IMG/VR virus record: IMGVR_UViG_3300046559_001153
Span: 1 to 64,000 of that record
Length of the DNA stretch: 64,000 nt
Direction: 5' to 3' (one strand)
In this document: piece by piece, positions 45,052 through 63,086 of the stretch
How positions within the stretch are numbered: the first letter of the stretch is position 1
Layout of the letters: each line of letters starts with the position of its first letter
The notes under the pieces: model-generated
The model's input: only the letters and a program-made list of their open reading frames with translations
What the model was told of the DNA's origin: nothing
Database searches by the model: none
Translations under genes and position numbers: made by a program

Positions 45052-45572
45052 ACCTGCGTAACTGGCTCAACACGTTGGTCCGCCGCATCAAGGTGGCTGT
45101 GTTCGGCCGTCAAAATTTGCCGGTCGTTGAGCCAGAATCACGTACCTACGACCAGATCGAGGCCGCACTAGCTTTCGACACTAGGGTCCTACAAGAGTAC
45201 ACTGACGCGCGATATCGACAACTAGCCCACCTGCGAGGACTCCGCGACTCTCGGACGGTTGTATTTCCGGGACATGAGGTGATCATTAACGGAATCGATT
45301 GGTCGGCCACAGGCCACCAGACGATGCAAGCACGCTGGGAAGCCATGGCCGCTCGCGAGTTGCAGACTAGTGAAGACAGCCGGCTTATTGAGCAGTTGCC
45401 GGCTTCCAAGCAAACTGACACCAAAATTACGCCTCCCCATCCCACTCCCAAACGAGCGGTTCACTGGGTTCCAGGTAAGCCTCGAGTTCTCCTTCGAGAG
45501 CGTACTTCTGCGAGTTCGCCAGATTCGGCCAGCGACCCTGGCTGTGCCACAGAGCCACGCAGCCCATGTTGA
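45048..45572 (+). CDS. Tag protein 5 (..WVPGKPRVLLR plus extension), overlapping terL 3' end
   Basis: TTGA coupling; 146-bp convergent overlap with terL. Confidence 0.55.
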   Translation: MNLRNWLNTLVRRIKVAVFGRQNLPVVEPESRTYDQIEAALAFDTRVLQEYTDARYRQLAHLRGLRDSRTVVFPGHEVIINGIDWSATGHQTMQARWEAMAARELQTSEDSRLIEQLPASKQTDTKITPPHPTPKRAVHWVPGKPRVLLRERTSASSPDSASDPGCATEPRSPC

Positions 45573-47280
45573 CGGCCTGGGCGAAGTCGTCGGGGTGCAT
45601 GGGGTTCTTGCCGATCGTGTAGGCTTCTTTTCCGAATCGTGTCGGAATCTTCTCTTCGACGAGCGACAGGAAGTCGTTCATCAGGCCTTCATGATCCTTG
45701 TCCAGGTAGTCGTACTGGAAGAACCGGATCTCGCAGTTCTTGATCTGTTGGCACGTCAGCAAGAGGCTGCGAGCCTTGTCGACCTGCCAGTGCTCCTTGG
45801 GGTGCTTCTCAGTCGCCAGCTTGAAGGTGAGGATATTCGCAAAGGCTGCACGAACGTAGGCGACCGGCATGATCCTCGACTGGGGCATACCTGTATGCAG
45901 CAGGAATGTTTCACGTAACGACCCGGCGCCCGTGTAGTCATGCACAAGAGCGTCGCACTTGAAGACGCGGAAGAATCTGGCAGCCATCTGAGCTTCGACA
46001 ACGTGTTCAGACGGGTTCAACGATCGATGCCCGTAGATCACGTCAATCTTTCCGTCCGGCAGCATGCCCATGACGGCAAAGGTTGTGAAGCTCTGGAACC
46101 TCTCACCTACGGCACCCCAGTCAACAGACAGGATGACCTTGATGTAGTCCCCTCGAGGAACCATTTCGGCCTGCTCAAACGTATTGCGGTGCGGGAGACT
46201 GGCCGCTCGTTTGAGGTCCGTTCGTGTGACCAGCTTGGTTCCCGTATCGGAGCTCTCGCCCAGGATTTCGTTGTGGAAGATGGCTTGGGTCATGTTGCCA
46301 GCGCCAGCCTGTCTGGCCAGTAGTTCGGCCCATTTTTCCCGGCTTGCATAGTGGGCCGGGAAAATAATCTGCGGCATGTGGTACCCGGCCATCGTTTGCC
46401 GTTTGTCAGCCACCTGGTGGATCCACCAGCCGTTTCTCGGATCGACTGGCTTGCGACATTTGGCACAGATGGTGCCCGGCCGCCTTGGACCGATGTCTGG
46501 GTGCCACGGTCCGAGCATCTTCTCCAGGTCGTGTGTCAGCGCGGGCACGTTGTCGTAATGGCATGCGTCGCACGGTACGATCCATTCGGCCATGCTGGAC
46601 GACGACCAGAGACCCTCGAGCGTGTTATCGAGAGTCAACGGAGTTCCGGTGTACAGCTCCCAGCCCCAGCGCGAGTAGGCCATAACCTGGGTGATCACAC
46701 CGATCAACGAACTGTCCAGGTTTTGAACTTCGTCAAAATTGATCTCGTCGCCCGACACGCCGCGGATACGATTCGCGTCACGAAAGGCAAAACTGAAAAT
46801 CATCATCGATTTGTTGCGGAATGTTTTCTGCAGCACGCTGCCGTTGCTCTTGCTGTTGACGAACAGCGTTCGCACGGGCGAATCGTTGATGAACGGCTCG
46901 ACGTAGTTTGTCGAGAACCGGCGAATCTGCTCGAACAGGGGAGTAACTGTGAGCAGCTTGAAATGCTTAATCGCATTGCACCGAGCCAGACCGATCGCGG
47001 CCAGACTGGTCGATTTTGAGATCTGGCGACCCGCCTTAACGACGGTCACTTTTGGTGAATGCGTTTTGAATAACGGCTCGAACGGAAAATGGTCATCGAG
47101 CGAATAAGGTTTTCCGTTCAGTGTGAACAAACTCGACAGAATCGGCCGCAACGTAGGGATATGCGTCTGTTCGAAAAATCGCAATTCCTTTTTGAGCTTC
47201 GCGAGCTCACGTTTAGAAAGCGGTGGTTTCTTTCTCGGCCCCTCATCCTTTTCAGGAGACAAAATTGCGTCCAAATCCAT
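45427..47280 (-). CDS. terL: Terminase large subunit (lambda gpA-like)
   Basis: KAGRQISKST, RIRG, FDEVQ, GTP, CxxC pairs, GYH..Q, NEILGE, nuclease SVDWG and DDFAQA. Confidence 0.85.
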   Translation of the reverse strand: MDLDAILSPEKDEGPRKKPPLSKRELAKLKKELRFFEQTHIPTLRPILSSLFTLNGKPYSLDDHFPFEPLFKTHSPKVTVVKAGRQISKSTSLAAIGLARCNAIKHFKLLTVTPLFEQIRRFSTNYVEPFINDSPVRTLFVNSKSNGSVLQKTFRNKSMMIFSFAFRDANRIRGVSGDEINFDEVQNLDSSLIGVITQVMAYSRWGWELYTGTPLTLDNTLEGLWSSSSMAEWIVPCDACHYDNVPALTHDLEKMLGPWHPDIGPRRPGTICAKCRKPVDPRNGWWIHQVADKRQTMAGYHMPQIIFPAHYASREKWAELLARQAGAGNMTQAIFHNEILGESSDTGTKLVTRTDLKRAASLPHRNTFEQAEMVPRGDYIKVILSVDWGAVGERFQSFTTFAVMGMLPDGKIDVIYGHRSLNPSEHVVEAQMAARFFRVFKCDALVHDYTGAGSLRETFLLHTGMPQSRIMPVAYVRAAFANILTFKLATEKHPKEHWQVDKARSLLLTCQQIKNCEIRFFQYDYLDKDHEGLMNDFLSLVEEKIPTRFGKEAYTIGKNPMHPDDFAQAVNMGCVALWHSQGRWPNLANSQKYALEGELEAYLEPSEPLVWEWDGEA

Positions 47281-48517: not shown

Positions 48518-48884
48518 TCAACCACAAGTCTTCTACGACGCCGCGGCCGCTACTCTTCACGACGCGGGGATGGAAGTGATTAAAAATCATCCCGAGGTCC
48601 GCAGCCTGGTCGTCGTTTTCGATTACAACAAGGATCTCAACGACGCAAGGATCCCGCATGCCATTTGGATTGGCGGCGGTCCCGACGGTCAGTTGACAAC
48701 GCCCGAGGCCATTCTTGGATCTGGTTACCAGTTGCTGAAAATGTTGAGGGCTGTCGCAGTTCGTGCCGAGGAAGTCCTGCGACTTCGCGAGAAGCAGATC
48801 GTCGATGCATCCAAGCGGTTACTCGAACTGGAGAAACAGATTGCCGACAAACAAACCGAAGGGCCTGCGACGGGAGCCCCTTGA
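48501..48884 (+). CDS. Hypothetical protein with C-terminal coiled coil
   Basis: AAGGA SD, GTG start; PEVRS..VVFDY. Confidence 0.65.
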   Translation: MDQTPDQPQVFYDAAAATLHDAGMEVIKNHPEVRSLVVVFDYNKDLNDARIPHAIWIGGGPDGQLTTPEAILGSGYQLLKMLRAVAVRAEEVLRLREKQIVDASKRLLELEKQIADKQTEGPATGAP

Positions 48885-48891
48885 GGACGTC

Positions 48892-49413
48892 ATGCGTCGT
48901 GCCCATGTTGACCCGGACACGGCTGACATTGTCATTGTGAGCGACGGAAGTGGCGCCGGATGGAAAATGGCCTGCGGCTGGGCGGCTACGATGATTGACC
49001 TGCGAACGAAAGCTCGCCGTGTATTTCATGGGGCCTGCTCGCCTGGGTCTGTGGGAATGGGAGAGCTTATGGGCCCACTCCACGCATTAACCTGGTGCCA
49101 CGCCCACGGCCACACAGGCAAACGGATTGTCGTCCTGTCAGACAGCCAGTACGTGGTCAACACGGGCAATAAAGAGCGCAAGGTCACGGTCAAAGCTAAC
49201 TTCTACCTGTGGAGCCAGTTCGATTGGTTCAAGCGACAAGGCTACCGGGTCCAGTGGGCATGGATGCGTAGAGATGAGTGTGCGCTGAACAAGTATGCTG
49301 ACGGTCTCAGCAGATCAGCCAGGCTCAAGCTCACAGAAATTGATCTGGCTGCGGCAGAAGAAGTCCTGCCGACCGGAGAGCGAATCGGAATCAACAGAAG
49401 AAACCCCCACTGA
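48892..49413 (+). CDS. rnhA: Ribonuclease HI
   Basis: VSDGSG, GELMG, LSDSQYVV, N..LW, N.YAD.LSR (D-E-D-D tetrad). Confidence 0.85.
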   Translation: MRRAHVDPDTADIVIVSDGSGAGWKMACGWAATMIDLRTKARRVFHGACSPGSVGMGELMGPLHALTWCHAHGHTGKRIVVLSDSQYVVNTGNKERKVTVKANFYLWSQFDWFKRQGYRVQWAWMRRDECALNKYADGLSRSARLKLTEIDLAAAEEVLPTGERIGINRRNPH

Positions 49414-49827: not shown

Positions 49828-49930
49828 CCTGGGCCTGTTGGTCTGGTTTCGTAGTGGGCCTGGTTTAAGAGGGCTCGTCCGCCCGCTGACAAGCGGGGCG
49901 GCGACGCCCGCATTAAATCTTTACGAAGTA

Positions 49931-50145
49931 AAGTGTATAGAACTAAGCTCAGGCCCAAAAGTGAGAAATAATGGACCCCTCTCGCGTATCTCTGAAGTGA
50001 TAGAAACAAGTTCCCCCTCTGTCACCAGGCTGGTCTATCGAGTACGTCAAAACCAGGCCTTTTTTGACCAAAACGAAGTGATAGAACGAAGTTCCCAAAG
50101 CTGCAAATTTCGGCCTTATTTGATGTGTGATAGAACTAAGTTCCT
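49931..50145. repeat. Four direct repeats, consensus GAAGTGATAGAACTAAGTTCC (iteron-like)
   Basis: Copies at 49931, 49994, 50075, 50125; GC hairpin 49871-49909 upstream. Confidence 0.75.
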
Positions 50146-50217
50146 GAACCCCCTTTTAAGGCTGAAAACAATGGATTTAGCCGAGGTAATCCACTGAAAT
50201 CCGACAAACCCGGAAAA

Positions 50218-51087
50218 ATGGCAGCCCGGCATACGATCCTCAGGATCTTGAATGGGCCACCCCAGGCTGCCCAGCGATTCGCTTTGATGCAGCCGATGTT
50301 TGGGAACAAATGGCTCGAGCATAAGCTGGAAAATTTGTTGAAAGCTGTGCGAACTTATTACTCGAATCGGCTGCATCGGCTTCGCGACATTGATTCCTTG
50401 CCAGGCTATGCTGTTAATGTTGCTCAGCATTTGACATACATGACGAACTGCCCGATGGCCACAGTCATTCAGCAGCCTAAGACTCTGTTGTGCAAGCTGT
50501 GGCGATTCTGCCCGTGGTGTTATTGTCGCTACGTCGTGAAGGACTCGTTTTGTCGAGTCGCTGACGCAATGGGCTGTGGGTACTATCTTGTGCCCCACGT
50601 GCCCGGCGAATTGATCGGTGTTGTGGCCAAGCTGATTATCCCTGACGACGCCGATGCGCCGCAGAGAGCCAGAGAATTTGTCCGCAACAGGAACTTGTAC
50701 CGGGATGCCACGCAGGCCGTCGGTGCTTTGACCTACTCAACCGTGCAACCGGCTTGGCAGCAAGTTGGACGGCCGCCGGAATGGGAACTGTCCCGGCGTG
50801 ACTTGCTGGTCGTTTCCGAGGTGCCGGACGACCTGGAGATGCGAGCTGTGCTTCCTGGTTGCAGCTTCTATTACCAGTATCACCTGAAAAACGTGCAGCG
50901 AACGGAGCTGGCTTCGCTGATCGGGTCTACGCTGCAGTACCCGGCTGGTCTGCTGTTGTACGATGTCGATAGCGCAGCTCGCATTCTGACGGCGACACAC
51001 GGATTACGGATGTCGGCGCCAACTGGTCTGTTCTACAACCAGGATGGGCCAGACCCCTACGATGATGAATGTTTGGGTTACGATTGA
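50218..51087 (+). CDS. Rep-like protein with C..C-x5-CPxC zinc site (HUH motif not retained)
   Basis: NC...LCKLWRFCPWC resembles the Zn site of rolling-circle Rep/IS91 proteins; follows the repeats. Confidence 0.45.
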   Translation: MAARHTILRILNGPPQAAQRFALMQPMFGNKWLEHKLENLLKAVRTYYSNRLHRLRDIDSLPGYAVNVAQHLTYMTNCPMATVIQQPKTLLCKLWRFCPWCYCRYVVKDSFCRVADAMGCGYYLVPHVPGELIGVVAKLIIPDDADAPQRAREFVRNRNLYRDATQAVGALTYSTVQPAWQQVGRPPEWELSRRDLLVVSEVPDDLEMRAVLPGCSFYYQYHLKNVQRTELASLIGSTLQYPAGLLLYDVDSAARILTATHGLRMSAPTGLFYNQDGPDPYDDECLGYD

Positions 51088-51099
51088 TTGGGAGAAAAA

Positions 51100-51492
51100 A
51101 TGGACAAAGCCTTCGTTACAGGCAGCCAGGCGTACGGGATGCCGCGGCCAGTGACCCGCTGGGAGAAGAATCCGTCTGATCTGGACCTGGTGGTTATGGT
51201 CAGTCGCAGCGACTTGAAGACCATCTTGGACTTTTATGAAGCGACCGGCGTCGGGCCCCCGGGCAGCTGGGAGCCTGGGAGAACCGGCGAGCCTGCACAG
51301 GCCAGCTTGCGGTTCGGCATGTTGAACCTTATCGTCTGCACTCGAGAAGAAGATTACGAAATGTGGCAGACGGGAACTGCGGCTTTGAAGGATAAAAAGC
51401 CGGTCACCCGTGATTTTGCCGTGGCCATGTTCGACAAGATAAAGCAGAAGATGAAAGCCTGGCAATTGTTTCCAGAGGAGTCACTGTCGTGA
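51100..51492 (+). CDS. Pol-beta-type nucleotidyltransferase-like protein
   Basis: FVTGS.AYG...SDLDLVV. Confidence 0.65.
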   Translation: MDKAFVTGSQAYGMPRPVTRWEKNPSDLDLVVMVSRSDLKTILDFYEATGVGPPGSWEPGRTGEPAQASLRFGMLNLIVCTREEDYEMWQTGTAALKDKKPVTRDFAVAMFDKIKQKMKAWQLFPEESLS

Positions 51493-51659
51493 TATTGCAG
51501 CAACAAGCGTTGGCCAATCTGTCTGAATTTTTGGAGCGTCTTCCCACGAAGACAGAGGCCCTGGTCCTGTTTACGACTGACATCTCCCTGGAAGACTGGC
51601 GAGAGACCAAGCGCTGGCTTGAAAAGGCAGCAACCGCAGAAGGAGTTCGATGTGAATGA
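51489..51659 (+). CDS. 56-aa hypothetical protein (not in ORF track)
   Basis: GAGGAG SD, GTGA overlap. Confidence 0.5.
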   Translation: MILQQQALANLSEFLERLPTKTEALVLFTTDISLEDWRETKRWLEKAATAEGVRCE

Positions 51660-52107
51660 AATCACCGTTTTGACGTGGGGAATTTTCGATTTGATTCATC
51701 CTGGCCATATGCGACTGCTTCGTAAGGCCCGCTGGTACGGCACTCGACTGGTTGTCGGGATCAACTCGGATGACTCTGTGCAGACGATCAGGATGTCAGA
51801 CAACCGGCCCGTTATGAACGAGTTGGAGCGGGCCTATGTGCTGCGGCACGTTGTCGGTGTTGACGAGGTGCGAATCTTTGATGCACCGAACGCGGCCGAT
51901 CTGATCTATTCTGTCCGTCCACGGTTTGCTGTTAAAGGCGGCAGCATTCCCGTGTCTGAAGAATTGGCTCTCAGCGACGTGCATGCCAAGTTCATTTATC
52001 TGCCCCCTTTGCCATCCCATCCGCATACTACCGAGCTCATCGGGCGAGCTTACGAGATTTACTGTGACGAACAAGGAATACCATGCCACCAAAGAAAGTT
52101 GCGTTGA
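51652..52107 (+). CDS. HxGH nucleotidyltransferase (RfaE/HldE domain II-like)
   Basis: GIFDLIHPGH, LVVGINSD.SV, RPV..E.ER, VD.V.IF, VKGG. Confidence 0.85.
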   Translation: MNEITVLTWGIFDLIHPGHMRLLRKARWYGTRLVVGINSDDSVQTIRMSDNRPVMNELERAYVLRHVVGVDEVRIFDAPNAADLIYSVRPRFAVKGGSIPVSEELALSDVHAKFIYLPPLPSHPHTTELIGRAYEIYCDEQGIPCHQRKLR

Positions 52108-53213
52108 TTTTTGCCGACTCTCATTTGGCTCAGGGCGCCTGGGTCAGCCGGGAGCCGATCAAGGGGGACAGCTACTTCGGATTTGAACAGATCATCGAGT
52201 TGGCCCTGGAACACAAAGTTCCTCTCATCGGTGCCGGCGATTTGATCGACACCAAACGGCCTGACCCTCGGACGATTGACGTCCTGCGTGTGGGATGTCA
52301 GAAACTGAAAGACGCTGAAATCCCGTTTCACTACATCATGGGCCAGCATGACCTGACGGATCCGCCGTGGTTCTCAGCTGTGCACGACTGGCCTCAGTTG
52401 ATCGAGCCGGACACATCGTTTATGAGCGGCTCTGTCGCTTTTGGAGGATTCTCCTGGCTGCCGTCTGACCAGGTTAATGGCCAGTTGGCCAAGATGATAA
52501 ATGTCGATGTGTTGATTCTCCATGAGGTCTGGGAAGAGTTCATGGGCGGCGGCCAGATCATTTGTGACGGCAGCCTGGTCCACACACCTGAGTCGGTCAA
52601 AGCTGTTTTCACCGGTGATTACCACAGGCACATGAAGAAGCAGGTGACTGGCGTAAAAGGAAATTCATTCCCAGTCTACTCGCCCGGCAGCACATGTCTG
52701 CAGTCGATCGATGAACCGCGGGAGAAGTCTGTTTACCTGCTGTACGCCGACATGTCAGTTAGACCACTTCCCTTGCTGTGTCGTCCGGCGATGACGATTA
52801 CAACGCCGATTGTCAGTGAAGCCGGGTTGGATGAATTCTGCGATACGATCAAGAGGCGAGCGGATACGATCAAACATGATGCGATGAACGACAAGGTCCC
52901 ATCGCATTTGTGCGAACCGTTGATCTACGTCGAGTACGCTCCGGACGTCACGAACATCGTGACCAGGCTTCGCAAGGCTGTGCCGTCGGTGGCCCACTTG
53001 TTCATGAAGCCTGTGTTCCGGGAATCAGAAGAACGGACTGCGCGTAAGGTAACTCGTGCCAAGGTGCTCAATAGCGGCCTGGACGGCGCGGTTGCCTCGC
53101 TGACTGTGGACGACGCCGGGCTCCGCGGAATGTGTCAGCAATTGTTGCTGGCCGACAATCCGGTGATCGAACTGCAAGCACTCAAGGAAACATTCTTTAA
53201 GAAAGGCGCGTGA
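52083..53213 (+). CDS. sbcD: SbcD/Mre11-like nuclease
   Basis: ADSHL, AGDLID, GQHD, LHE, GDYH, PGS. Confidence 0.85.
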   Translation: MPPKKVALIFADSHLAQGAWVSREPIKGDSYFGFEQIIELALEHKVPLIGAGDLIDTKRPDPRTIDVLRVGCQKLKDAEIPFHYIMGQHDLTDPPWFSAVHDWPQLIEPDTSFMSGSVAFGGFSWLPSDQVNGQLAKMINVDVLILHEVWEEFMGGGQIICDGSLVHTPESVKAVFTGDYHRHMKKQVTGVKGNSFPVYSPGSTCLQSIDEPREKSVYLLYADMSVRPLPLLCRPAMTITTPIVSEAGLDEFCDTIKRRADTIKHDAMNDKVPSHLCEPLIYVEYAPDVTNIVTRLRKAVPSVAHLFMKPVFRESEERTARKVTRAKVLNSGLDGAVASLTVDDAGLRGMCQQLLLADNPVIELQALKETFFKKGA

Positions 53214-53323
53214 TGAGGGACTGGAATGAAGCTTGGTTTGCCATCATTCTTGGTACGGTGGCCGGTACCGTGGCGGGCACTCTGACCGCCGTGATCATCT
53301 GGTTTTTTACGAAAGGCTCGTGA
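53213..53323 (+). CDS. 36-aa single-TM peptide (not in ORF track)
   Basis: TGATG coupling on both sides; WFAIILGTVAGTVAGTLTAVIIWFF. Confidence 0.55.
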   Translation: MRDWNEAWFAIILGTVAGTVAGTLTAVIIWFFTKGS

Positions 53324-53526
53324 TGGCTGTGATAGAGGCGTACGCAAAACTGGTCTGGTCACCTGGCGATATCCAATCGTTACGGCCCGATTGGGATATT
53401 CCCCGATGTCGAAGATTCTTGGAAAACAACCAGAATCAAATTCGTGACCGGCTGTGCGAGATCGGCTGGGATGTCATTGAGACATTCTTGTCGTTGGAAG
53501 GAGACGACGAATGCAAATCTTCGTAG
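53323..53526 (+). CDS. Small hypothetical protein
   Basis: W...DI...RPDW....FL......I.DR..E.GW. Confidence 0.6.
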   Translation: MAVIEAYAKLVWSPGDIQSLRPDWDIPRCRRFLENNQNQIRDRLCEIGWDVIETFLSLEGDDECKSS

Positions 53527-53834
53527 ACGACATCCCAGTTTGTTCGTTGTCTGGTCTGATGCCAAATGGGCAGTTCTTCGATGAGGATGAGCGTGTCATG
53601 CGCTGCCGTGAGTCGATGGAACGTGGCGTCATCTGCTTGCGGGAAACTTTCCCCGACATTGTTCCCCAGGCGTGCGTTGTAAAAGTGCTCAGGGCGGTTT
53701 GTACGGCCGCCAACTCCGGGCTGTGTGATCCCAACTTGGAAAGCAATGTGCTTATGGCGTACATGAAACATCACAACGTATTGGACCGGTTCACGGTCAC
53801 AAGTGACGATGACAGCTGGTATCCAGCTAGATAG
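53511..53834 (+). CDS. Hypothetical protein
   Basis: AAGGAG SD. Confidence 0.6.
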   Translation: MQIFVDDIPVCSLSGLMPNGQFFDEDERVMRCRESMERGVICLRETFPDIVPQACVVKVLRAVCTAANSGLCDPNLESNVLMAYMKHHNVLDRFTVTSDDDSWYPAR

Positions 53835-53843
53835 GAACAGGCG

Positions 53844-55994
53844 ATGCTACTTAAGCGTTTGACACTTCGTAACATTGGCGTTCACCAGAAATTGGACATT
53901 ACGTTCAAGCCGGGGTTGGTTGGCATCTTCGGTGCCAACGGGGCCGGCAAGTCGACAATCACTAACTCTGCTTACGCTTGCCTGACTAATGACTTCTCCA
54001 GGTTTCCAGGTACTCGAGATCAAATTATCAATGATCAGTCCCAACCCGGCGATCTGGCAGAGATCGCTTGTGATCTGGATATCGATGGTGTCGAGTACTC
54101 ACTGAAACGTGAGCTCGGCCGTAGCAAGTGTCGCATGGAATTTACTCGCCCCGGGCAGCCGCGGCAGCGAATCGACAAAGACGGAGAATTCCAGCAAGCC
54201 CTCTTCAGCGCTTTGGGATTTCCGAGAGATGTGCTCGACAACTTCGTGTTCATCGACCAGTGGGAGACGTTCGCCTTTCTCAAAGCGACACCGGCCAAAC
54301 GAATGATGGCCTTTCACGGGTTGTGCAATACGGGCAAGGCTGAGCGGATCTGGGACGCGGTTGGTCAACGGATTGCCGCCGATGCCAGTCTTGTGGCTGA
54401 CGTACAGGACAACCTGGCTGAGTTTCGTAAACAGAAGGACGACACGGCGGCCGAGTATGTGAGACAACACACGGCGCTCGCCAGCATGTTGCAGGTCGGG
54501 CCTGTGGTTTTGGCTGATCTCCAGCAGAAGGTTAATGATCTGACGGCGTTGGCTAACCTGCGAGAGAATCTGCGTGAGGCTGAGGAAGCTTTGGCCAGTG
54601 CAGCTGCCTCTTCTCTGGCGGCTGCCACCAAATTGTTGCCGGTCAAGAAGGAGCGTGACCGGTTGCAGTCGGCTGTGGATGCAATCGACACGTCGACAGC
54701 TGAGAAGTGCGTGCCCATTCTGCAGGAGTACATCCTGCAGCAGCGGCAGGTCGCCGAGGACAAGCAGCAGATCGATGAGCTGGCTGAGTTCCTGGCTGAC
54801 ATGGCCCAGGAGCCTGAGCTGGAGCTGCCGGAAGGAATCACGTACGAGCCGATGGAAGAGATCAACAAGCGGTTGATCCTGAACAAGGCCGAACTGGCGA
54901 CGGCCAAGGCCTATGTGAAGAATTTCACAAAATCACCCAAGTGTCCCACCTGCGGTCAGGATGCGACTATGCTACTGGCTAAATACCAGAAGACTGTCGA
55001 CGAGTTGCCAGAGCAGATCCAGCAGGACGAAGAGACGGTCGAATGCATCGCTGATTTCAACGCTGACGTGGTCGTTTTCAGACAACAGGTGTCGGATGCC
55101 CAAGCTAAACTGGGCGCGTTGCGCACGCGTTTGGATAACGCAACGCTCGTCGTTCTAGACGATCCGCACTGGGTGACGGAACCGTTGGCCGCCCTCGAGG
55201 ATTTCAAGCTCACGATCGCCAGACGCAAGTTGGCTGAGGTTGCTCTGGCGACGTATGTCAAGTTGACGCTCACTCCAGCAGAGGCTAAGGCCAACGTGGC
55301 TAAGGGGGCTGTAGCTCCGGCAGAGAAACGCGTGGTTAAACTGACGGCCGATTTGCTCATCTACGGCGAAGCCAGTGCTGACGATTTGCCCGCGGTCAAA
55401 GAGGCATTGGCCACAGCAGTCGCCGCCAATAACAGATACACGACTGCTCATGCGTTGGCCAAAGCTGCCAAAACGACAGCTGAAAACGCTGCAGCGGCGT
55501 ACAAGCGGGCTAAGCAGTCCCTCGAGGATGCCCGCCAGCGTTCCCGGGTGGCCCGCTTGTGGCTTGAGCGGCTGGAAAAGGTCCGAGAGGTCTTTCACAG
55601 AGACGGAGCTCCCAAGCTGGTCGCCCAGAGCCGTCTGGAGAGCCTTGAGGACGATATCAACTTGTTCCTTGAGCCATTCGGCAGCCCGTTCACGGTCAGG
55701 GCGGGCGAGGATTTCAACTTGCTGGCTCAAGTCCCCGGGCACTCTGAACGAGAAGCCACCTGGCTTAGCGGGGGACAAAAGGTCGTCCTGTCGATGGCCT
55801 TCTTGCTGTCACAAAGCCCCGGCATGCTGGTGCTTGATGAGCCTGGCGCAGGCCTGGACACCGCGAACAGGGCCTACCTGCGTACGGCCTTGCAGCATTT
55901 CCAGTCAGTTGCGAAAAGTCGCGGGTTGCAGATCATCATGATCACTCATGACGAAAGCATGGAGAGCTCGTTCAACCAGGTCATTCAGTTGTAA
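53844..55994 (+). CDS. sbcC: SbcC/Rad50-like ATPase
   Basis: GANGAGKST, Q-loop, CPTCG zinc hook, LSGGQ, LVLDEP..GLD, ITHD. Confidence 0.92.
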   Translation: MLLKRLTLRNIGVHQKLDITFKPGLVGIFGANGAGKSTITNSAYACLTNDFSRFPGTRDQIINDQSQPGDLAEIACDLDIDGVEYSLKRELGRSKCRMEFTRPGQPRQRIDKDGEFQQALFSALGFPRDVLDNFVFIDQWETFAFLKATPAKRMMAFHGLCNTGKAERIWDAVGQRIAADASLVADVQDNLAEFRKQKDDTAAEYVRQHTALASMLQVGPVVLADLQQKVNDLTALANLRENLREAEEALASAAASSLAAATKLLPVKKERDRLQSAVDAIDTSTAEKCVPILQEYILQQRQVAEDKQQIDELAEFLADMAQEPELELPEGITYEPMEEINKRLILNKAELATAKAYVKNFTKSPKCPTCGQDATMLLAKYQKTVDELPEQIQQDEETVECIADFNADVVVFRQQVSDAQAKLGALRTRLDNATLVVLDDPHWVTEPLAALEDFKLTIARRKLAEVALATYVKLTLTPAEAKANVAKGAVAPAEKRVVKLTADLLIYGEASADDLPAVKEALATAVAANNRYTTAHALAKAAKTTAENAAAAYKRAKQSLEDARQRSRVARLWLERLEKVREVFHRDGAPKLVAQSRLESLEDDINLFLEPFGSPFTVRAGEDFNLLAQVPGHSEREATWLSGGQKVVLSMAFLLSQSPGMLVLDEPGAGLDTANRAYLRTALQHFQSVAKSRGLQIIMITHDESMESSFNQVIQL

Positions 55995-57883: not shown

Positions 57884-58225
57884 GTGGACTGGCTTATTGC
57901 CCACCTAATCGGTGACTATCTGATTCAAAACGATTGGATGGCGAGAAATAAAAAGACCAGCACAAGCCTGTGTCTGATTCATGTCATCTCGTACACGCTC
58001 GTAATGGCCTGTTTTACGCTGTGGCCGCCGACAGCTTTGTTGATCGTGGCAGTCACCCATTTTGCACAGGATCGAACTCAATTCGTCGCCTGGTACATGC
58101 GTGTGATGGGCCAGACTGAGTTCGCCAAACCACCACTGGCGCCGTGGTCGTGCATCATAGTCGACAACGTGCTCCACCTGGTGGTTCTTTATTGCATTTC
58201 GATTTCCCCGTTGGTACGCCCATGA
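57884..58225 (+). CDS. DUF3307 membrane protein
   Basis: AHLIGDYLIQNDWMA..K, H...YT, THF..D, DN.LH. Confidence 0.8.
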   Translation: MDWLIAHLIGDYLIQNDWMARNKKTSTSLCLIHVISYTLVMACFTLWPPTALLIVAVTHFAQDRTQFVAWYMRVMGQTEFAKPPLAPWSCIIVDNVLHLVVLYCISISPLVRP

Positions 58226-59673
58226 AAATCAATGTTTTGCGCCGTGGTCAGTGGATAGTGATCGACCCGACGACCCCGGAAATTCTGACTGTGTTGGATA
58301 AAGCGTTGACGTACACAAAGCGAGAGTTCCTCTACGGTCTCGACCGTAAGCGGGCTCTGGCTGATGGTCGACCGCCGCTTCAGCTTGTAGATCTCGCTTG
58401 TTACACGCTCGATCACAAACAACGGGTGGCATGCGCCTACGGTTTCTACCCTCGCATTCGAAAGTTGTTGCGCGAGCTGGGGCACGAGGTGAATCTGAGT
58501 AATCTGGCCCCGCACCCGCATCCAGAGATCTTCGAACCGGACTGGAGCAACGTGCTCTCGTTCACAGAACTGCGATACCGACAACAGGAATTTCTTGAGC
58601 TGCTGATCAATAAAGATCAAGGACGATTCGACTGTCCACCCGGGTTTGGCAAGACAATGTTGATCGCCCTGGCTGCCCGGCTGTTTCCGAAAGCCAAGAT
58701 CGATATCACGGCCGTGTCCGCGGATGTTTGCCGCAACATCTGTAGCGAGCTCGAAACGGCGTTGCCGAATGTTGGCTTGATTGGTGGCGGCAAAAAGCAA
58801 AAGGGTCACCGGGTGACTGTGTACGTGGCCAAGTCGTTGTGTCACAGCCCGGCGGATGCGGATATTCTTTTTGGCGACGAATGTCACCAGCTTCCGTGTG
58901 ACAGCTACATCGAGCATTTGACCCGATACCGCTACGCCAGGAAGTACGGCATGTCGGCCACACACGACATGCGATTGGACGGCCAGGACATGCGGGTTGA
59001 ATCGGTTTTCGGCCCGATCATCATGCAGCTGTCCTACCAGGAAGGCGAGGAGAACAAACTGGTTGTGCCTATCCGAGTCGAGTGGACAGACGTCGAAATG
59101 GATTACGACCCGTGCGCCGGAATGGACCAGGTTGAGAAGCTCCGACACGGAATCTGGCGAAACGATTATCGCAACTCGTTGATAGCGGCTGATGCTCGAC
59201 AACACCGGGCAGACGAACAAGTGCTGATCGTTGTTAACACGATCGATCACGCTGTCCATTTGAAACAGGTGTTGCCCGAGTTTACGTTGGTTTACGCGGA
59301 GAACGGCTTGGACGCCATTCATCGTCGCCGGTATACGAAGTGGGGGCTCATTCCGGAGAATGAGCCGTTGATGACCCTCGAGCGTCGCAGTAAGTTGCGG
59401 GTTAAATTTGAATCAGGTGAGTTGAAGAAAGTCATCGCGACCGGTGTGTGGTCGACGGGCGTTGACTTTCGTCAGTTGGAAGTCCTGATTCGAGCCGACG
59501 CCAGCGGTAGTCCGACGCTCGACACTCAGCTTCCTGGCCGTATCTCCAGGTTAAGCGCCGAGACCGGCAAGAACTGCGGGATCTTGCGAGACTACCGCGA
59601 TCAGTTCAACAAGACGTTTGCGCAGCGGGCCAAACGTCGTGAAGCCAATTATGCGGCTAATGGATGGGAGTAA
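58222..59673 (+). CDS. SF2 DNA helicase (UvsW/XPB-like)
   Basis: LRYRQ, PPGFGKT, DECH, MSAT, TGVD, Q.PGR.SR. Confidence 0.88.
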   Translation: MKINVLRRGQWIVIDPTTPEILTVLDKALTYTKREFLYGLDRKRALADGRPPLQLVDLACYTLDHKQRVACAYGFYPRIRKLLRELGHEVNLSNLAPHPHPEIFEPDWSNVLSFTELRYRQQEFLELLINKDQGRFDCPPGFGKTMLIALAARLFPKAKIDITAVSADVCRNICSELETALPNVGLIGGGKKQKGHRVTVYVAKSLCHSPADADILFGDECHQLPCDSYIEHLTRYRYARKYGMSATHDMRLDGQDMRVESVFGPIIMQLSYQEGEENKLVVPIRVEWTDVEMDYDPCAGMDQVEKLRHGIWRNDYRNSLIAADARQHRADEQVLIVVNTIDHAVHLKQVLPEFTLVYAENGLDAIHRRRYTKWGLIPENEPLMTLERRSKLRVKFESGELKKVIATGVWSTGVDFRQLEVLIRADASGSPTLDTQLPGRISRLSAETGKNCGILRDYRDQFNKTFAQRAKRREANYAANGWE

Positions 59674-59675
59674 GT

Positions 59676-60341
59676 ATGCCACTGGTTAATGCGAGATTGG
59701 TGGAATTGACCGCCGGTGTCGTCCGTGCCACGTACATTCAAGAACGCAGTCTGATTGACGGTAAATCGTACATCCCGTCGGTTAAGTGGGATGGTAATGG
59801 GCACGGTAGATCGGCTGATTCGATCTGGCAGAAGATCGCACAGAAGCTGTTGCTTTACGGAGTGGAGCCTGGCAATTTTGTTCGACATTATTTCGAGCGT
59901 ATCGCCGTGGTTGGCGGAAACCGGATAGCGTATTACCCGACTGATCTTTTGAATGAGAGCCTGATCAAGGCATATCGCGATGACTGGCGTCCTATCGCGA
60001 TTGCTGATCTGCGTGACTCGTTCAATTTTCAGACGAACATAGCGAGAATCGCCTTCCTGACGTATCAGGGTCTGCGAAAGGTTGACGCTATCGAGGCGAC
60101 CAAGGCCGTACTGTGGGATCTCGATGTGGAGCTGACGCCCCTGTTTCGTTTCTGTTGGGCTGTCAGTATGAAACGAAAATCGTTTCGCAAGATTCGCGAC
60201 AACTATCTCTTATTGGCCGCGATCCAATACAGCAGCGACAGCGAGTGTTACGACGAGGTTTGGGGAGACCGGATTCCCCAGTCTTTTAAGACCTATGTAA
60301 TCAAGACTCTCGGTTTAGCGTGCAAAGGACGAAAGTTATGA
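59676..60341 (+). CDS. Hypothetical replication-region protein
   Basis: KWDG, LTPLFRFC, Y...W motifs; between helicases. Confidence 0.65.
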   Translation: MPLVNARLVELTAGVVRATYIQERSLIDGKSYIPSVKWDGNGHGRSADSIWQKIAQKLLLYGVEPGNFVRHYFERIAVVGGNRIAYYPTDLLNESLIKAYRDDWRPIAIADLRDSFNFQTNIARIAFLTYQGLRKVDAIEATKAVLWDLDVELTPLFRFCWAVSMKRKSFRKIRDNYLLLAAIQYSSDSECYDEVWGDRIPQSFKTYVIKTLGLACKGRKL

Positions 60342-61969
60342 CAGGGATGAAATTCAAAAAGAGAGAAATTGATACGACTGTCGCGACGCTGAGCGAGGCG
60401 GAAGTCGAACTGATGATGAAGACGGCCATTCGACGCGAAGATGTGTTCACGACGGTTCGTGGCCAGCTGACGGCCGAGATTCTGCACAATTATTCGGAGA
60501 TCCTGTTTGTCGTGTGGCTGGTACTTGAGACGCACTACACGAAACACAAGCAGATGCCCAAGTTCCAGACTCTCAGGGCCGAGCTGAAGGCACACTGTTC
60601 CAGACACAAAGAAGGCTCGACCGGGAACCTGGGAATTGACGAACTACGTCAGGCCATTTTGTTTTGTCGAGAAGCCTACTCGATCAAGCTGGCCGATTTT
60701 GATCCATTGTGGGCGATCGGAAAAATTCGATCGTTCCTGGAGGAGCAGCTTCTTGCCAAAGCTAAGAAGTCCCTCGAGGAAGAAGACCGACGCCCCGGCA
60801 ATCTGCCTGATTTTCTCAAGCAGATGCATGTGGCGTCGGAAGCGATTTCCAGCCTGCAGGGCGACAGCGCCGAACTGCCATTCCCGATTGGCTGGGAACC
60901 CCGCCCCTTGCCGGTGACATCGACCGGCATCGATTTTCTGGACAAGTTCATGGGAGGCGGGGATGCTCTGGGAGAGATCGCCGTGACGATTGGTGCAACT
61001 GGCGGATGTAAGACGACGCTGGCCAATCAGATTGCCTGCAGGCGTGCCCAGTATTACTGGACGCAGGCGAGGGATAACCCGGATGCTCCGAAGCAGATGG
61101 TCTACATGGTGCCTTATGAATCGCCGGTTGAGCCGGAACTTCGACAGAGGATTCTGATGTGCCACGCTGTTGTTCGTCGCGACGAGATGGAAGAGAAGGG
61201 TTGGGCCGGTTTGTCGACGTCTTCAACACCTAAGCCTTATGAGCTCGAGATGTTCAGAGGGGCGATCGCCAGTGGACATTTTCGTGGGGAACGCGAGCGT
61301 ATTGAGGATGCGTCAACCATTCTTAATTCGTCGTTACGATTCATCGACTGCAGTGGGGCTGACCGCGCTCACCCTAACCGCGGCGGCGGATTTGTTGACG
61401 AGCTGGCGGCGATTCTTCAAAATGAACTGCGGACCTACCCTGATCGACAGATCGGCACGGTCATTATCGATTACGCCGGCGTGATGGTCGCAAAACATCT
61501 CGCGGCAACTGGTCAGGATTACAGTCAGCTCCGCCATCATCTCGCCAACTTGCCCCTGCAACTTCGCGATCGAATCGCCTTGCCGATGAATTGTTCGATC
61601 TGGCTGATGCATCAGCTGGCTGGCGCCGCCAACAAGAAGTCGGCGTGGGCGAACATGCATCACTCCGATTCGCAGGAATGCAAGACACTCGCAGATAACT
61701 GCAGTTTCGCGTTTGTTCTTGGAAACATCGATGCTAACGGGCATTGTGTTATCCGCTGCACGAAGCATCGTCGTCAGCCCCGTCACGAACAGGAGATCAT
61801 TAAAGTGGAAGGACAACTAGCCCGAGTCCGCAGTACTCAGGGACAATACTACTACGACGCCCGACGTGCCCAGATTGTCAGTTACGCCGACGCCCAGAAA
61901 ACCATGTCAGCAGAAGAAACACGCCCAGCTCAACGTGGCAGTCTGGGAGTACCCGACTATGAGGGGTAA
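60338..61969 (+). CDS. dnaB: DnaB-like (SF4) replicative helicase
   Basis: STGI.FLD..MGGG, GATGGCKTT, IIDY, HQL, KHR. Confidence 0.78.
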   Translation: MTGMKFKKREIDTTVATLSEAEVELMMKTAIRREDVFTTVRGQLTAEILHNYSEILFVVWLVLETHYTKHKQMPKFQTLRAELKAHCSRHKEGSTGNLGIDELRQAILFCREAYSIKLADFDPLWAIGKIRSFLEEQLLAKAKKSLEEEDRRPGNLPDFLKQMHVASEAISSLQGDSAELPFPIGWEPRPLPVTSTGIDFLDKFMGGGDALGEIAVTIGATGGCKTTLANQIACRRAQYYWTQARDNPDAPKQMVYMVPYESPVEPELRQRILMCHAVVRRDEMEEKGWAGLSTSSTPKPYELEMFRGAIASGHFRGERERIEDASTILNSSLRFIDCSGADRAHPNRGGGFVDELAAILQNELRTYPDRQIGTVIIDYAGVMVAKHLAATGQDYSQLRHHLANLPLQLRDRIALPMNCSIWLMHQLAGAANKKSAWANMHHSDSQECKTLADNCSFAFVLGNIDANGHCVIRCTKHRRQPRHEQEIIKVEGQLARVRSTQGQYYYDARRAQIVSYADAQKTMSAEETRPAQRGSLGVPDYEG

Positions 61970-63086
61970 TCTGAAAGCGACCGGCCGCGTTAAGTTGAAA
62001 TCATCTGGCCGTCTGGAACCGGGACAGGTGATTAACCCTAAATTGTACAGGGCTCTCGAGAAACGTTTTGGCGAGGTGCGTGTAGGCTCGCCAGGGCTCG
62101 AGCTGATCGGCAAAACTGAGCGAATTACGACAGCGTCCGGCCGCGATCATCCTGTCTTGTCGGTGAGGTACTGGGGGGAGCATTACGCTGTCTGCTGCCC
62201 CAAATGCGGAGATACCAAACATAGGCTCTATTTCAGCCAGCGATTTGGTGTCAGCGACAAGCACGGGCTCAATAAGAATCTCGTGTATTGCTTCAACGAG
62301 AACTGCTATGCCGAGTGGGAAGACCGAGAACACCTGTACTCTTTGTTGTTCAACTTCAATATCGGTTCTCAGAAAATTACGGATTTGCGTAAAGGCAAGA
62401 CTCTGACTGAGGTCGAGCTGAAGGTGGTGATCCCCGGCATCACTTACAAGTTGGAAGATCTCGATGAAGATCATGCTTCTCGACGATACATTGAAAGCCG
62501 CGGTTTCGATCCAAACACCCTGTCAAAAATCTACGGGGTGTCTTATTGCGCGTTTGCCCAGGATTACCGCGTGCACAGGCGTATCTTGATCCCCGTCTAC
62601 AATGACGGGAACCTTGTCGGCTGGCAGGCTCGCTATGTGGGTGAACTGGATTGGAAGGGTGAGAATAAGTCAGTCAAGAAGTACCATACCTGCCCGGGCA
62701 TGAGGAAGTCTCTTTGCCTGTACAACCTGGACAGGGCTAAGCACTATCCGACCGGGGTAGTTGTTGAAGGTGTGACTGATGTGTGGTCCTTCGGTCCAAT
62801 GGCCGTCTCTGGTTTCGGAGACAAGATCTCCCCAGGTCAAGTCGACTTGCTCGTTAAACATTTTCAGAACAAGTCGTTGTTGATTGTGTTGGATAGTGAG
62901 CCGAGCGCGTTGGAAAAAGCGCACGAAGTCGCGGAAGAACTGCGTGGCCGAATCGTGAAGGGCGTAGCCGTGATAACGTTGCCCGACGGATCTGATCCGG
63001 CTGATCTGGATCGACGAGTTCTGTGGCAGATCGCTAAGAAACAGGCGGCAGAGCAGGGTGTGTTCTGCTCATTCAAACGGGCGTAA
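61959..63086 (+). CDS. dnaG: DnaG-type primase
   Basis: CPKC..H..C..C zinc finger, YIESRG, RILIP, GWQAR, KY, VVEGVTD, DPAD. Confidence 0.85.
   Translation: MRGNLKATGRVKLKSSGRLEPGQVINPKLYRALEKRFGEVRVGSPGLELIGKTERITTASGRDHPVLSVRYWGEHYAVCCPKCGDTKHRLYFSQRFGVSDKHGLNKNLVYCFNENCYAEWEDREHLYSLLFNFNIGSQKITDLRKGKTLTEVELKVVIPGITYKLEDLDEDHASRRYIESRGFDPNTLSKIYGVSYCAFAQDYRVHRRILIPVYNDGNLVGWQARYVGELDWKGENKSVKKYHTCPGMRKSLCLYNLDRAKHYPTGVVVEGVTDVWSFGPMAVSGFGDKISPGQVDLLVKHFQNKSLLIVLDSEPSALEKAHEVAEELRGRIVKGVAVITLPDGSDPADLDRRVLWQIAKKQAAEQGVFCSFKRA

What the first reader, a model, noticed from the sequence alone, without database searches (positions are those of the whole stretch)
49828..51087. Candidate replication origin: GC hairpin, four 21-bp direct repeats and a HUH-less Rep-like protein
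Seen: a 390-nt gap after palindrome copy 6 holds a hairpin (49871-49909) and the repeats AAGTGTATAGAACTAAGCTC, GAAGTGATAGAAACAAGTTCCC, GAAGTGATAGAACGAAGTTCCC and GTGTGATAGAACTAAGTTCCT at irregular 50-81 nt periods. The next ORF has C..CKLWRFCPWC and WELSRRDLLVV where a HUH strand might be expected. Inference: a domesticated, nicking-dead Rep acting as iteron-binding initiator. Alternative: the repeats delimit small guide-like RNAs for the Nop-like or RAMP-like proteins.
Basis: partly seen in the sequence, partly recalled or inferred. Interest (0 to 1): 0.66.

Follow-up and report, generated by a model that had tools for sequence, protein, structure and literature searches.

The report
HUH-less Rep gene with upstream repeats
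An uncultured 224-kb soil jumbo phage has a hairpin and four unique direct repeats just upstream of a rolling-circle Rep relative that has lost its metal-binding histidines, which looks like a replication-control site or origin but has not been shown to be one.

Summary
The gap 49828-50217 is the second-largest non-coding gap of a circular 224-kb phage genome. It holds a very stable GC hairpin, a small conserved hairpin and four same-strand repeats with core ATAGAAC-N-AAG-Y-TC. These repeats occur nowhere else in the genome.

The next ORF (50218-51087) is a true but very divergent homologue of plasmid Rep_1 (PF01446, pC194 type):
- Profile-profile comparison gives probability 93%, E 2.9e-7.
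- The AlphaFold model has pLDDT 92. Its best solved match is the SIRV1 Rep, and it matches Rep_1 clusters at TM 0.60-0.64.
- The two HUH histidines align to Ser192 and Arg194. About 105 relatives also lack them.
- The catalytic tyrosine position is kept (Tyr241).

The family is absent from PHROGs and NCBIfam, none of the listed relatives carries a Pfam domain, and it has no match in GenBank phages. It sits at the head of the replication module: RNase H, Rep-like, SbcD, SbcC, helicases, primase.

Relatives keep a large upstream gap. Three of ten lineages carry their own multi-copy repeats there.

My best reading is that the repeats are binding sites for the adjacent inactivated Rep, acting as origin and/or operator (confidence about 0.4). 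GC skew does not mark this locus, no RNA data exist, and binding is untested. The guide-RNA alternative is rejected.

The parts
49871..49909 (+). GC-rich imperfect hairpin (about 17 pairs, loop GACA), 43 nt after the stop codon of the upstream gene, with no U-run after it
   Evidence: Fold. The stem is kept in L001 and, with compensatory changes, in L010. Its 23-nt core is unique in the genome.
49919..49933 (+). Small hairpin CTTTAC-GAA-GTAAAG that abuts and overlaps the start of repeat 1
   Evidence: Fold. It is identical in L001. In L010 a hairpin of different sequence (TTATGC...GCATAA) sits at the same position, so the structure is conserved while the sequence is not.
49931..49950 (+). Direct repeat 1 (AAGTGTATAGAACTAAGCTC)
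   Evidence: The block from the hairpin's right arm to this repeat is nearly identical in L001, although the two proteins are only 44-45% identical.
49958..49974 (+). Possible degenerate fifth copy (AAAGTGAGAAATAATGG), followed by a conserved CGCRTATC box
   Evidence: Seen by eye. AAAGTG, then 19 nt, then CGCRTATC is shared by the window, L001 and L010. Not tested statistically.
49994..50015 (+). Direct repeat 2 (GAAGTGATAGAAACAAGTTCCC)
50075..50096 (+). Direct repeat 3 (GAAGTGATAGAACGAAGTTCCC), in the most AT-rich part of the gap (GC 0.38-0.40)
50124..50145 (+). Direct repeat 4 (TGTGTGATAGAACTAAGTTCCT), 73 nt upstream of the ATG
50218..51087 (+). 289-aa Rep_1-superfamily protein without HUH. 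It has a four-Cys motif (C78, C92, C98, C101). Ser192 and Arg194 stand at the HUH histidine positions, and Tyr241 at the catalytic tyrosine position.
   Evidence: The start at 50218 is preferred over the database call at 50287, because relatives align from residue 5 and the first residues are modelled with pLDDT 91.
48763..49413 (+). Context: RNase H gene two genes upstream
   Evidence: phrog_531, E 3e-12. The same neighbour appears in relatives.
52083..55994 (+). Context: SbcD/Mre11-like gene (52083-53213) and SbcC-like gene (53844-55994), in conserved synteny with the Rep-like gene
58144..63086 (+). Context: SF2 helicase, DnaB-like helicase and DnaG-type primase genes

Best explanation
The 390-nt gap is a protein-binding control region at the head of the phage's replication and recombination module. 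The four unique direct repeats are most likely sites for the protein encoded immediately downstream. That protein is a Rep_1-family rolling-circle initiator that has lost its metal-binding HUH histidines. I infer that it now works as a sequence-specific origin-binding protein: it marks a replication origin, and probably represses its own promoter, instead of nicking DNA.

Shown here: the repeats, their uniqueness in the genome, the homology and fold of the protein, the loss of HUH, and the genomic context.

Inferred: that this protein binds these repeats, that binding starts replication, and that the phage helicase and primase are recruited.
For: - The repeats are real and unique in the 224-kb genome.
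- The gap is the second-largest non-coding stretch of a genome that is about 91% coding.
- The 119-aa ORF across the gap is not conserved in relatives.
- The protein is homologous to Rep_1: hhalign probability 93%, E 2.9e-7 over 180 columns.
- The model is confident, with pLDDT 91.8.
- Its best solved match is the SIRV1 ORF119 Rep at Z 6.9, with the next row at 4.9.
- It matches Atlas Rep_1 clusters at TM 0.60-0.64 over 220-240 residues.
- It matches microvirus replication initiators in BFVD.
- The HUH histidines are replaced throughout 105 relatives.
- The locus opens a run of RNase H, SbcD, SbcC, two helicases and a primase.
- The synteny with SbcCD and a large upstream gap (167-437 nt) recur in relatives on contigs of up to 174-220 kb.
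- Lineages L002 and L015 carry their own multi-copy motifs in the same gap: 3 direct plus 1 inverted, and 3 direct plus 2 inverted. In both, 0 of 100 shuffles reach the observed count. A motif that changes with the protein is the pattern expected of a protein and its cognate site.
- The non-coding block from hairpin to repeat 1 is far better conserved in L001 than the 45%-identical protein.
- Precedents: pMV158 RepB binds three direct repeats and nicks a hairpin about 80 bp away (PMC4753449). Papilloma- and polyomaviruses use an inactivated HUH domain as their origin-binding domain (PMC6668415).
Against: - There is no binding or replication data of any kind.
- The cumulative GC-skew minimum is at 32 kb. 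At 48 kb there is only a step-up in slope, which coincides with the end of the reversed terminase gene.
- The repeat spacing of 63, 81 and 49 nt is irregular, unlike classical tandem iterons.
- The gap is only moderately AT-rich, at GC 0.38-0.47 against 0.555 for the genome.
- Seven of ten lineages show no repeats beyond chance at k=13 with up to 2 mismatches.
- The catalytic tyrosine position is retained in 101 of 105 relatives, which is unexpected for a purely DNA-binding domain.
- Another protein could be the one that binds the repeats.
Confidence: 0.4

Rival explanations
1. The region is a transcriptional control region only. The repeats are operators for a regulator, either the Rep-like protein acting as a repressor or another phage or host factor, that times expression of the replication and recombination operon. 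The origin lies elsewhere.
For: - The repeats sit between a terminator-like hairpin and the first gene of a co-directional module.
- The last copy is 73 nt upstream of the ATG.
- The core has partial dyad symmetry (GAAC-N3-GTTC), as operators do.
- L002 and L015 mix direct and inverted copies.
- GC skew gives no origin signal here.
Against: - No sigma-70-like promoter was found on the + strand in the gap, although host promoters are unknown.
- The motif is not shared with any other intergenic region.
- The adjacent gene descends from replication initiators, not from transcription factors.
Confidence: 0.25
2. The protein is still a strand-transferase that works without the HUH-bound metal. It would use Tyr241 together with the family-conserved Arg194, which sits exactly at the second-histidine position, and it would nick at the conserved small hairpin or at the GTGATA part of the repeats to prime rolling-circle or sigma-mode replication.
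For: - Tyr241 aligns with the catalytic Tyr214 of pC194 Rep and is kept in 101 of 105 relatives.
- Arg194 is kept in 81 of 105 relatives, at the metal-ligand position.
- A hairpin followed by direct repeats is the layout of a nick-plus-bind double-strand origin (PMC4753449).
- The repeats contain TGATA, and the pC194 origin read contains CTTGATA. That this is the pC194 nick site I recall from memory only.
Against: - Both HUH histidines are replaced, and so are the positions aligned to pC194 Glu142 and Glu210. I recall from memory only that these two glutamates are catalytic.
- Four relatives have Phe instead of Tyr.
- No HUH-fold enzyme is known to work without the metal site.
- The TGATA resemblance is only five bases.
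Confidence: 0.1
3. The elements act as RNA: a terminator followed by small RNAs, or a CRISPR-like mini-array whose repeats delimit guide RNAs.
For: - The gap folds better than shuffles as RNA, z -3.7.
- Two hairpins are conserved in structure.
Against: - No Rfam family matches.
- The spacers of 41, 59 and 27 nt are irregular.
- The first inter-repeat segment is conserved in relatives whose proteins are only about 45% identical, which true spacers would not be.
- The folding signal comes mainly from the GC hairpin. The internal hairpin with a T-run is not better than shuffles, z -0.6.
- No RNA run holds the sequence.
Confidence: 0.05
4. The repeats are a packaging (pac or cosB-like) site bound by the small terminase subunit.
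For: - The large terminase gene lies 2.5 kb upstream on the opposite strand.
- Arrays of short repeats are typical of terminase recognition sites (general knowledge).
Against: - In relative L007 the gap and the Rep-like gene sit next to ribonucleotide reductase and ligase genes, with no terminase gene among the called genes upstream. The gap therefore travels with the Rep-like gene.
- No contig ends or read pile-ups were seen, although the data were contigs only.
Confidence: 0.05

Closest known systems
Rep_1 (PF01446) rolling-circle initiators of plasmids pC194 and pUB110
   Same: - Homologous over 180 profile columns.
- Same Cys-rich C...CPxC(W)R motif.
- Same order of strands and helices.
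- A tyrosine at the catalytic position.
- Similar size, 289 against about 310 aa.
   Different: - Both HUH histidines, motif I (FLTLT) and the positions aligned to pC194 Glu142 and Glu210 are replaced.
- It is encoded by a 224-kb double-stranded DNA phage that has its own helicases and primase, not by a small rolling-circle replicon.
- No Pfam, NCBIfam or PHROG model detects it.
pMV158 RepB double-strand origin (nick hairpin plus direct-repeat bind locus)
   Same: A hairpin followed within about 20-250 nt by a set of direct repeats, all just upstream of the rep gene. RepB binds three direct repeats and nicks a hairpin loop about 80 bp away (PMC4753449).
   Different: - RepB is an active HUH enzyme of the Rep_2 family, and its repeats are tandem 11-mers.
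- Here the repeats are 14-22 nt and dispersed at 49-81 nt.
- Here the protein lacks the metal site.
Origin-binding domains of papillomavirus E1 and polyomavirus large T antigen
   Same: - An HUH-fold domain that has lost the nuclease motifs and binds repeated double-stranded origin sites (PMC6668415).
- The HPV-18 E1 DNA-binding domain appears among the weak structural matches, Z 3.7.
   Different: - Those domains lack all three motifs and are fused to an SF3 helicase.
- This protein is a stand-alone Rep_1 derivative with a Cys cluster and a retained tyrosine, in a bacteriophage.
SIRV1 ORF119 Rep (PDB 2x3g)
   Same: Best solved structural match: Z 6.9, 109 residues aligned, model residues 109-247.
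   Different: - Only the core domain matches, at 7% identity.
- I know ORF119 as an active nicking Rep only from memory; I did not check it here.
- It has no N-terminal helical or Cys-rich part.
Iteron origins with an adjacent initiator gene (lambda O, SPP1 G38P, P1 and F plasmid Rep proteins)
   Same: Several direct repeats unique to one locus, next to the putative initiator gene, in a replicon with a DnaB-type helicase. This comparison rests on general knowledge.
   Different: - Those initiators have winged-helix or other folds, not the HUH fold.
- Their iterons are usually regularly spaced.

Membership tests
Rep_1 (PF01446) / HUH endonuclease superfamily | Profile-level sequence homology to Rep_1 | tested here: met
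   hhalign of A1 (51 relatives) against A5 (8 annotated plasmid Rep proteins): probability 93.2%, E 2.9e-7, 180 columns.
Rep_1 (PF01446) / HUH endonuclease superfamily | Rep fold | tested here: met
   Model pLDDT 91.8. SIRV1 Rep at Z 6.9. Rep_1 clusters at TM 0.60-0.64. Microvirus initiators in BFVD.
Rep_1 (PF01446) / HUH endonuclease superfamily | HUH motif (two metal-binding histidines) | tested here: not met
   pC194 His155 and His157 align to Ser192 and Arg194. Across 105 relatives the first position is variable and the second is Arg in 81 and Ser in 14; histidine is not among the six commonest residues at either position.
Rep_1 (PF01446) / HUH endonuclease superfamily | Catalytic tyrosine (motif III) | tested here: met
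   Tyr241 aligns to pC194 Tyr214; it is Tyr in 101 and Phe in 4 of 105 relatives. The neighbouring Glu210 and Lys213 of pC194 are not kept. Whether this tyrosine is catalytic here is unknown.
Rep_1 (PF01446) / HUH endonuclease superfamily | Motif I (FLTLT) | tested here: not met
   It aligns to LIGVVAKLII, and there is no conserved Thr-Leu-Thr in the family.
Rep_1 (PF01446) / HUH endonuclease superfamily | Site-specific nicking and covalent attachment | not testable with these tools
   This needs biochemistry.
Iteron-type replication origin | Three or more direct repeats confined to one locus next to the initiator gene | tested here: met
   Four copies, found nowhere else in 224 kb, ending 73 nt upstream of the gene.
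Iteron-type replication origin | Regular or helically phased spacing | tested here: not met
   Spacing is 63, 81 and 49 nt.
Iteron-type replication origin | Adjacent AT-rich unwinding element | tested here: inconclusive
   The lowest GC is 0.38 at 50080-50139, against 0.555 for the genome. There is no sharply AT-rich block.
Iteron-type replication origin | Strand-composition inflection at the locus | tested here: not met
   The cumulative GC-skew minimum is at 32 kb, with only a slope increase near 48 kb. Nearly all genes lie on one strand, so skew is a weak test in this genome.
Iteron-type replication origin | Same arrangement in relatives | tested here: inconclusive
   A large gap is present in every lineage whose upstream gene is on the contig (seven of the ten tested). 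Significant multi-copy repeats occur in 3 of 10. L001 and L010 have 2-3 degenerate copies.
Iteron-type replication origin | Initiator binding and origin firing | not testable with these tools
   No reads from infected cells exist. Public runs are soil DNA kept as contigs.
CRISPR-like or guide-RNA array | Uniform repeat-spacer period, with spacers not conserved among relatives | tested here: not met
   The spacers are 41, 59 and 27 nt. The first inter-repeat segment is conserved in L001 and L010. There is no Rfam match.
Inactivated HUH origin-binding domain (E1 / large T type) | HUH fold lacking all three motifs, fused to an SF3 helicase | tested here: not met
   The fold is present and HUH is lost, but the tyrosine is retained and there is no helicase domain; the protein is a stand-alone 289 aa. 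It may work in a similar way, but it is not a member.

The most novel reading that the evidence does not exclude
This is a previously undescribed branch of the HUH superfamily in which the metal-binding histidines are replaced by a conserved arginine while the catalytic tyrosine is kept. Such an enzyme would be a metal-independent Tyr/Arg strand-transferase, comparable in chemistry to tyrosine recombinases and type IB topoisomerases. It would nick at the conserved hairpin and repeat element to start replication of jumbo phages that probably infect Planctomycetes.
Probability: 0.1. Interest if true: 0.85.

Novelty: new variant of a known kind. Interest (0 to 1): 0.58.

Why it matters
How jumbo phages start DNA replication is largely unknown, and none of the uncultured phages carrying this gene has an identified origin or initiator.

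A Rep_1 derivative without HUH, conserved at the head of the replication module in a clade of soil jumbo phages of about 170-220 kb, would be a prokaryotic parallel to the switch seen in papilloma- and polyomaviruses, where a nuclease became an origin-binding domain.

It gives a concrete, testable pair of protein and DNA site. It also defines a protein family of about 110 cluster representatives that current domain libraries do not recognise.

Tried and rejected
- Word-index homologue searches found only the protein itself.
- PHROGs, NCBIfam and PDB sequence searches found nothing. The only hint was an insignificant similarity of the Cys motif to the zinc knuckle of the eukaryotic primase small subunit, E about 1-3. 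I treat it as a chance match of a short motif.
- Foldseek against the PDB gave only generic ferredoxin-like folds.
- Scans of viral and metagenome contigs with the protein, with P0002 and with the conserved DNA block found no further relatives. The alignments were too divergent for pattern scans.
- tblastn of four family members against GenBank phages found no match.
- hhalign against the single pC194 sequence aligned only the Cys motif. My last homologue search returned only near-identical pC194 Reps. I therefore built the Rep_1 profile from eight plasmid records.
- Sequencing runs: 21 soil, rhizosphere and root DNA runs hold the sequence or part of it, and none is RNA.
- Laying 1,701 bases on the contigs of four runs showed no variants, joints or ends. 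This gives no information on expression, physical ends or selection.
- A complex prediction of the Rep-like protein with the DnaB-like helicase gave no verdict, with a score of 0.00. This is not evidence either way.
- A k-mer search for a shared intergenic promoter motif found none beyond T-runs and AAGGAG.
- The consensus promoter scan found no + strand site in the gap.
- The 119-aa ORF 49838-50197 is rejected as a gene, because it is not conserved in L001 or L010.
- The hairpin as 'copy 6' of a palindrome family could not be reproduced.
Full report
WHAT THE WINDOW IS. The window is the first 64 kb of a single contig of 224,270 bp whose ends overlap exactly by 127 bp, so the assembly is circular or terminally redundant. 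GC content is 55.5%, and the tools class it as a complete virus record. It encodes a large terminase (45427-47280, minus strand), and almost every other gene lies on the plus strand. The terminase is at most 26% identical to that of any GenBank phage. Near-identical DNA occurs in about twenty soil and rhizosphere metagenomes. This is an uncultured jumbo phage.

THE OBSERVATION.
- The GC hairpin at 49871-49909 is the most stable GC hairpin I found in the window.
- It is followed by a small hairpin, CTTTAC-GAA-GTAAAG, at 49919-49933.
- Four same-strand repeats follow, starting at 49931, 49994, 50075 and 50124, with spacing of 63, 81 and 49 nt.
- The core ATAGAA-NN-AAG-Y-TC occurs four times in the whole genome, all here.
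- The 18-mer consensus matches three times against 0.06 expected.
- Among the 26 gaps of 250 nt or more, only this one has more than two copies of any 14-mer at up to 2 mismatches. Shuffles never exceed two.
- With ORFs of 60 aa or more masked, this is the second-largest non-coding stretch of the genome.
- The 119-aa ORF that crosses the gap has no conserved counterpart in relatives, so the region is non-coding.
- I could not confirm that the hairpin belongs to a repeated palindrome family.

THE PROTEIN. The ORF 50218-51087 has no match in PHROGs, NCBIfam or PDB sequences, and none in GenBank phages. An exhaustive HMMER search found 110 cluster representatives of similar length. Across 105 of them the following are invariant or nearly so:
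- four cysteines (C78, C92, C98, C101);
- Pro99, Arg104, Gly169, Pro178 and Gly270;
- Tyr241 followed by Pro242.

There is no conserved His-x-His. The AlphaFold model built on this alignment is confident, with pLDDT 91.8 and pTM 0.90. The structural matches are:
- Best solved match: the Rep of the archaeal virus SIRV1 (2x3g), at Z 6.9 with the next row at 4.9.
- ESM Atlas: clusters in which 84-92% of members carry Pfam Rep_1, at TM 0.60-0.64 over 220-240 residues.
- BFVD: named hits are microvirus replication initiators.
- A language-model search had independently pointed to Rep_1 clusters.

To test homology by sequence I read pC194 and seven other annotated plasmid rep genes from PLSDB and aligned them. 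I then compared that profile with the phage family. hhalign gave probability 93.2% and E 2.9e-7 over 180 columns. The alignment pairs the following:
- The Cys motif C...CPxC(W)R of both families.
- The HUH strand YNPHFHVLIAV of pC194 with EWELSRRDLLVV. His155 aligns to Ser192, and His157 to Arg194.
- The conserved Glu of the preceding Rep_1 strand (consensus TTEVT; pC194 Glu142) with Thr175.
- pC194 Glu210 with Ser237.
- The catalytic Tyr214 with Tyr241.

That Glu142 and Glu210 are catalytic in pC194 Rep is from my memory and was not checked here.

So the protein is a genuine, highly diverged Rep_1 relative. Its whole family has lost the metal-binding histidines and motif I but has kept the tyrosine, and it has a conserved arginine (81 of 105) at the second-histidine position.

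CONTEXT. The gene opens a replication and recombination module:
- RNase H at 48763;
- the Rep-like gene;
- SbcD/Mre11 at 52083;
- SbcC at 53844;
- an SF2 helicase at 58144;
- a DnaB-like helicase at 60320;
- a DnaG-type primase at 61866.

Relatives lie on metagenomic contigs of up to 174-220 kb with the same order, Rep-like gene then SbcD then SbcC. RNase H or the reversed terminase is often found upstream. The family is therefore a conserved component of a clade of uncultured jumbo phages.

COMPARATIVE ANATOMY OF THE GAP. Every relative whose upstream gene is on the contig keeps an unusually large gap before the gene, 167-437 nt.
- L001, the closest relative with a full-length gene (44-45% protein identity): the block from the right arm of the GC hairpin through the small hairpin to repeat 1 is almost identical to the window, far above the level expected from the protein.
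- L010: the GC hairpin is kept with compensatory changes. A small hairpin of unrelated sequence sits in the same place. It is followed by two copies of a related motif, GAT(T)AG...TTAAGTT, and by the shared boxes AAAGTG, then 19 nt, then CGCRTATC.
- A gapless test with k=13, up to 2 mismatches and 100 shuffles found significant multi-copy repeats in 3 of 10 lineages:
  - the window, with four copies;
  - L002, with TTAGTTACAG as three direct copies and one inverted;
  - L015, with GTTAGCTGTTTA as three direct copies and two inverted.
- The other seven lineages show hairpins or palindromes but no repeats beyond chance.

A motif that differs between lineages while its position next to the gene is kept is what one expects of a DNA-binding protein and its cognate sites. 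It is not universal, and that limits the inference.

WHAT DOES NOT SUPPORT AN ORIGIN.
- The cumulative GC-skew minimum lies at 32 kb. Mean skew is -0.018 over 0-30 kb, +0.023 over 30-48 kb and +0.068 after 48 kb. The step at 48 kb coincides with the end of the reversed terminase gene.
- The gap is only moderately AT-rich.
- No RNA run holds the sequence.
- The contigs of four independent soil runs are identical to the window and show no ends or joints.
- A complex prediction with the DnaB-like helicase gave no verdict.

MECHANISM. Shown: a unique cluster of four direct repeats with two conserved hairpins, directly upstream of a Rep_1 homologue without HUH, at the head of the replication module. 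Inferred: the protein binds the repeats as double-stranded DNA, marks an origin and probably regulates its own promoter, and the phage helicases and primase then take over.

Two precedents exist. Active HUH initiators bind direct repeats near a nick hairpin, as pMV158 RepB does (PMC4753449). Inactivated HUH domains serve as origin-binding domains in papilloma- and polyomaviruses (PMC6668415).

I put this reading at about 0.4, with the rivals as follows:
- A purely transcriptional operator region: about 0.25.
- A still-active nuclease using Tyr241 and Arg194 without the HUH metal: about 0.1. This is the most novel reading that the data do not exclude.
- RNA or guide-array readings: about 0.05.
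- A packaging site: about 0.05.

The guide-array reading fails on the irregular spacing, on the conserved inter-repeat sequence and on the lack of any RNA family match.

A LEAD, NOT A TEST. The pC194 origin read (TCTTGATAATAAGGGTAACTA...CTAGTTACCCTTAAGTTA) shares short words with the phage repeats: TGATA with the window, TAGTTAC with L002, and CTTAAGTT with L010. That CTTGATA is the pC194 nick site is from my memory. The matches are 5-8 bases long and could be chance.

NOVELTY AND SCORE. The protein family is not recognised by PHROGs or NCBIfam, and none of the listed relatives carries a Pfam domain. I found no paper describing it. It is a new variant of a known kind, a Rep_1 derivative, and the principle of HUH inactivation is already known from eukaryotic viruses. 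The origin function is unproven. Interest is 0.58.

Noticed in passing
L010 5481-6369 (the same place as L011 and L017; contig DASYAR010000248.1): A 35-kb contig of a Planctomycetaceae MAG carries a decayed copy of the same module: a truncated RNase H-like ORF, the hairpin and repeat gap, and a Rep-like gene cut to 122 aa. It lies beside DnaJ and an integrase fragment. This suggests that the hosts of this phage clade are Planctomycetes, or that an old insertion remnant is present.
   Followed up: partly
L002 2433-2985; L005 6957-7334; L020 3946-5037; contigs of P0006: In several relatives the Rep-like gene is followed directly by a small protein with an RNA polymerase alpha C-terminal domain (PF03118) and by a CsrA-like protein. 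The window instead has a phrog_15166 protein (51088-51492) and a cytidylyltransferase-like gene (51619-52107).
   Followed up: no
window 49838-50197: Repeats 1-3 are spaced by multiples of three (63 and 81 nt), so they fall in one frame of a 119-aa ORF and give EV(K/I)..E.SS peptides. The ORF is not conserved in L001 or L010, so this is probably coincidence.
   Followed up: yes
whole genome G000:C1: The contig ends overlap exactly by 127 bp. Nearly all genes are on the plus strand, and the large terminase is one of the few reversed genes. GC skew is slightly negative over 0-30 kb and positive afterwards.
   Followed up: partly
window 43655-44014; L019 3849-4238: The 119-aa ORF at 43655-44014 reads like a WGR domain (FWEV...RFGRRGTNGQ) by eye. 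In relative L019 a WGR-domain protein (PF05406) lies immediately downstream of the Rep-like gene.
   Followed up: no
L015 1-1000; contig of P0006: Large proteins with intein and LAGLIDADG domains lie a few genes upstream of the Rep-like gene in two distant relatives.
   Followed up: no
L022 940-1060 (pC194, minus strand): The pC194 origin region shares short words (TGATA, TAGTTAC, CTTAAGTT) with the lineage-specific repeats upstream of the phage Rep-like genes. This may reflect inherited DNA recognition, or it may be chance.
   Followed up: partly
window 50218 versus 50287: The public gene call for this protein (P0001, 266 aa) starts at Met24. Alignment with relatives and the confident model of residues 1-23 favour the upstream ATG at 50218.
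   Followed up: yes
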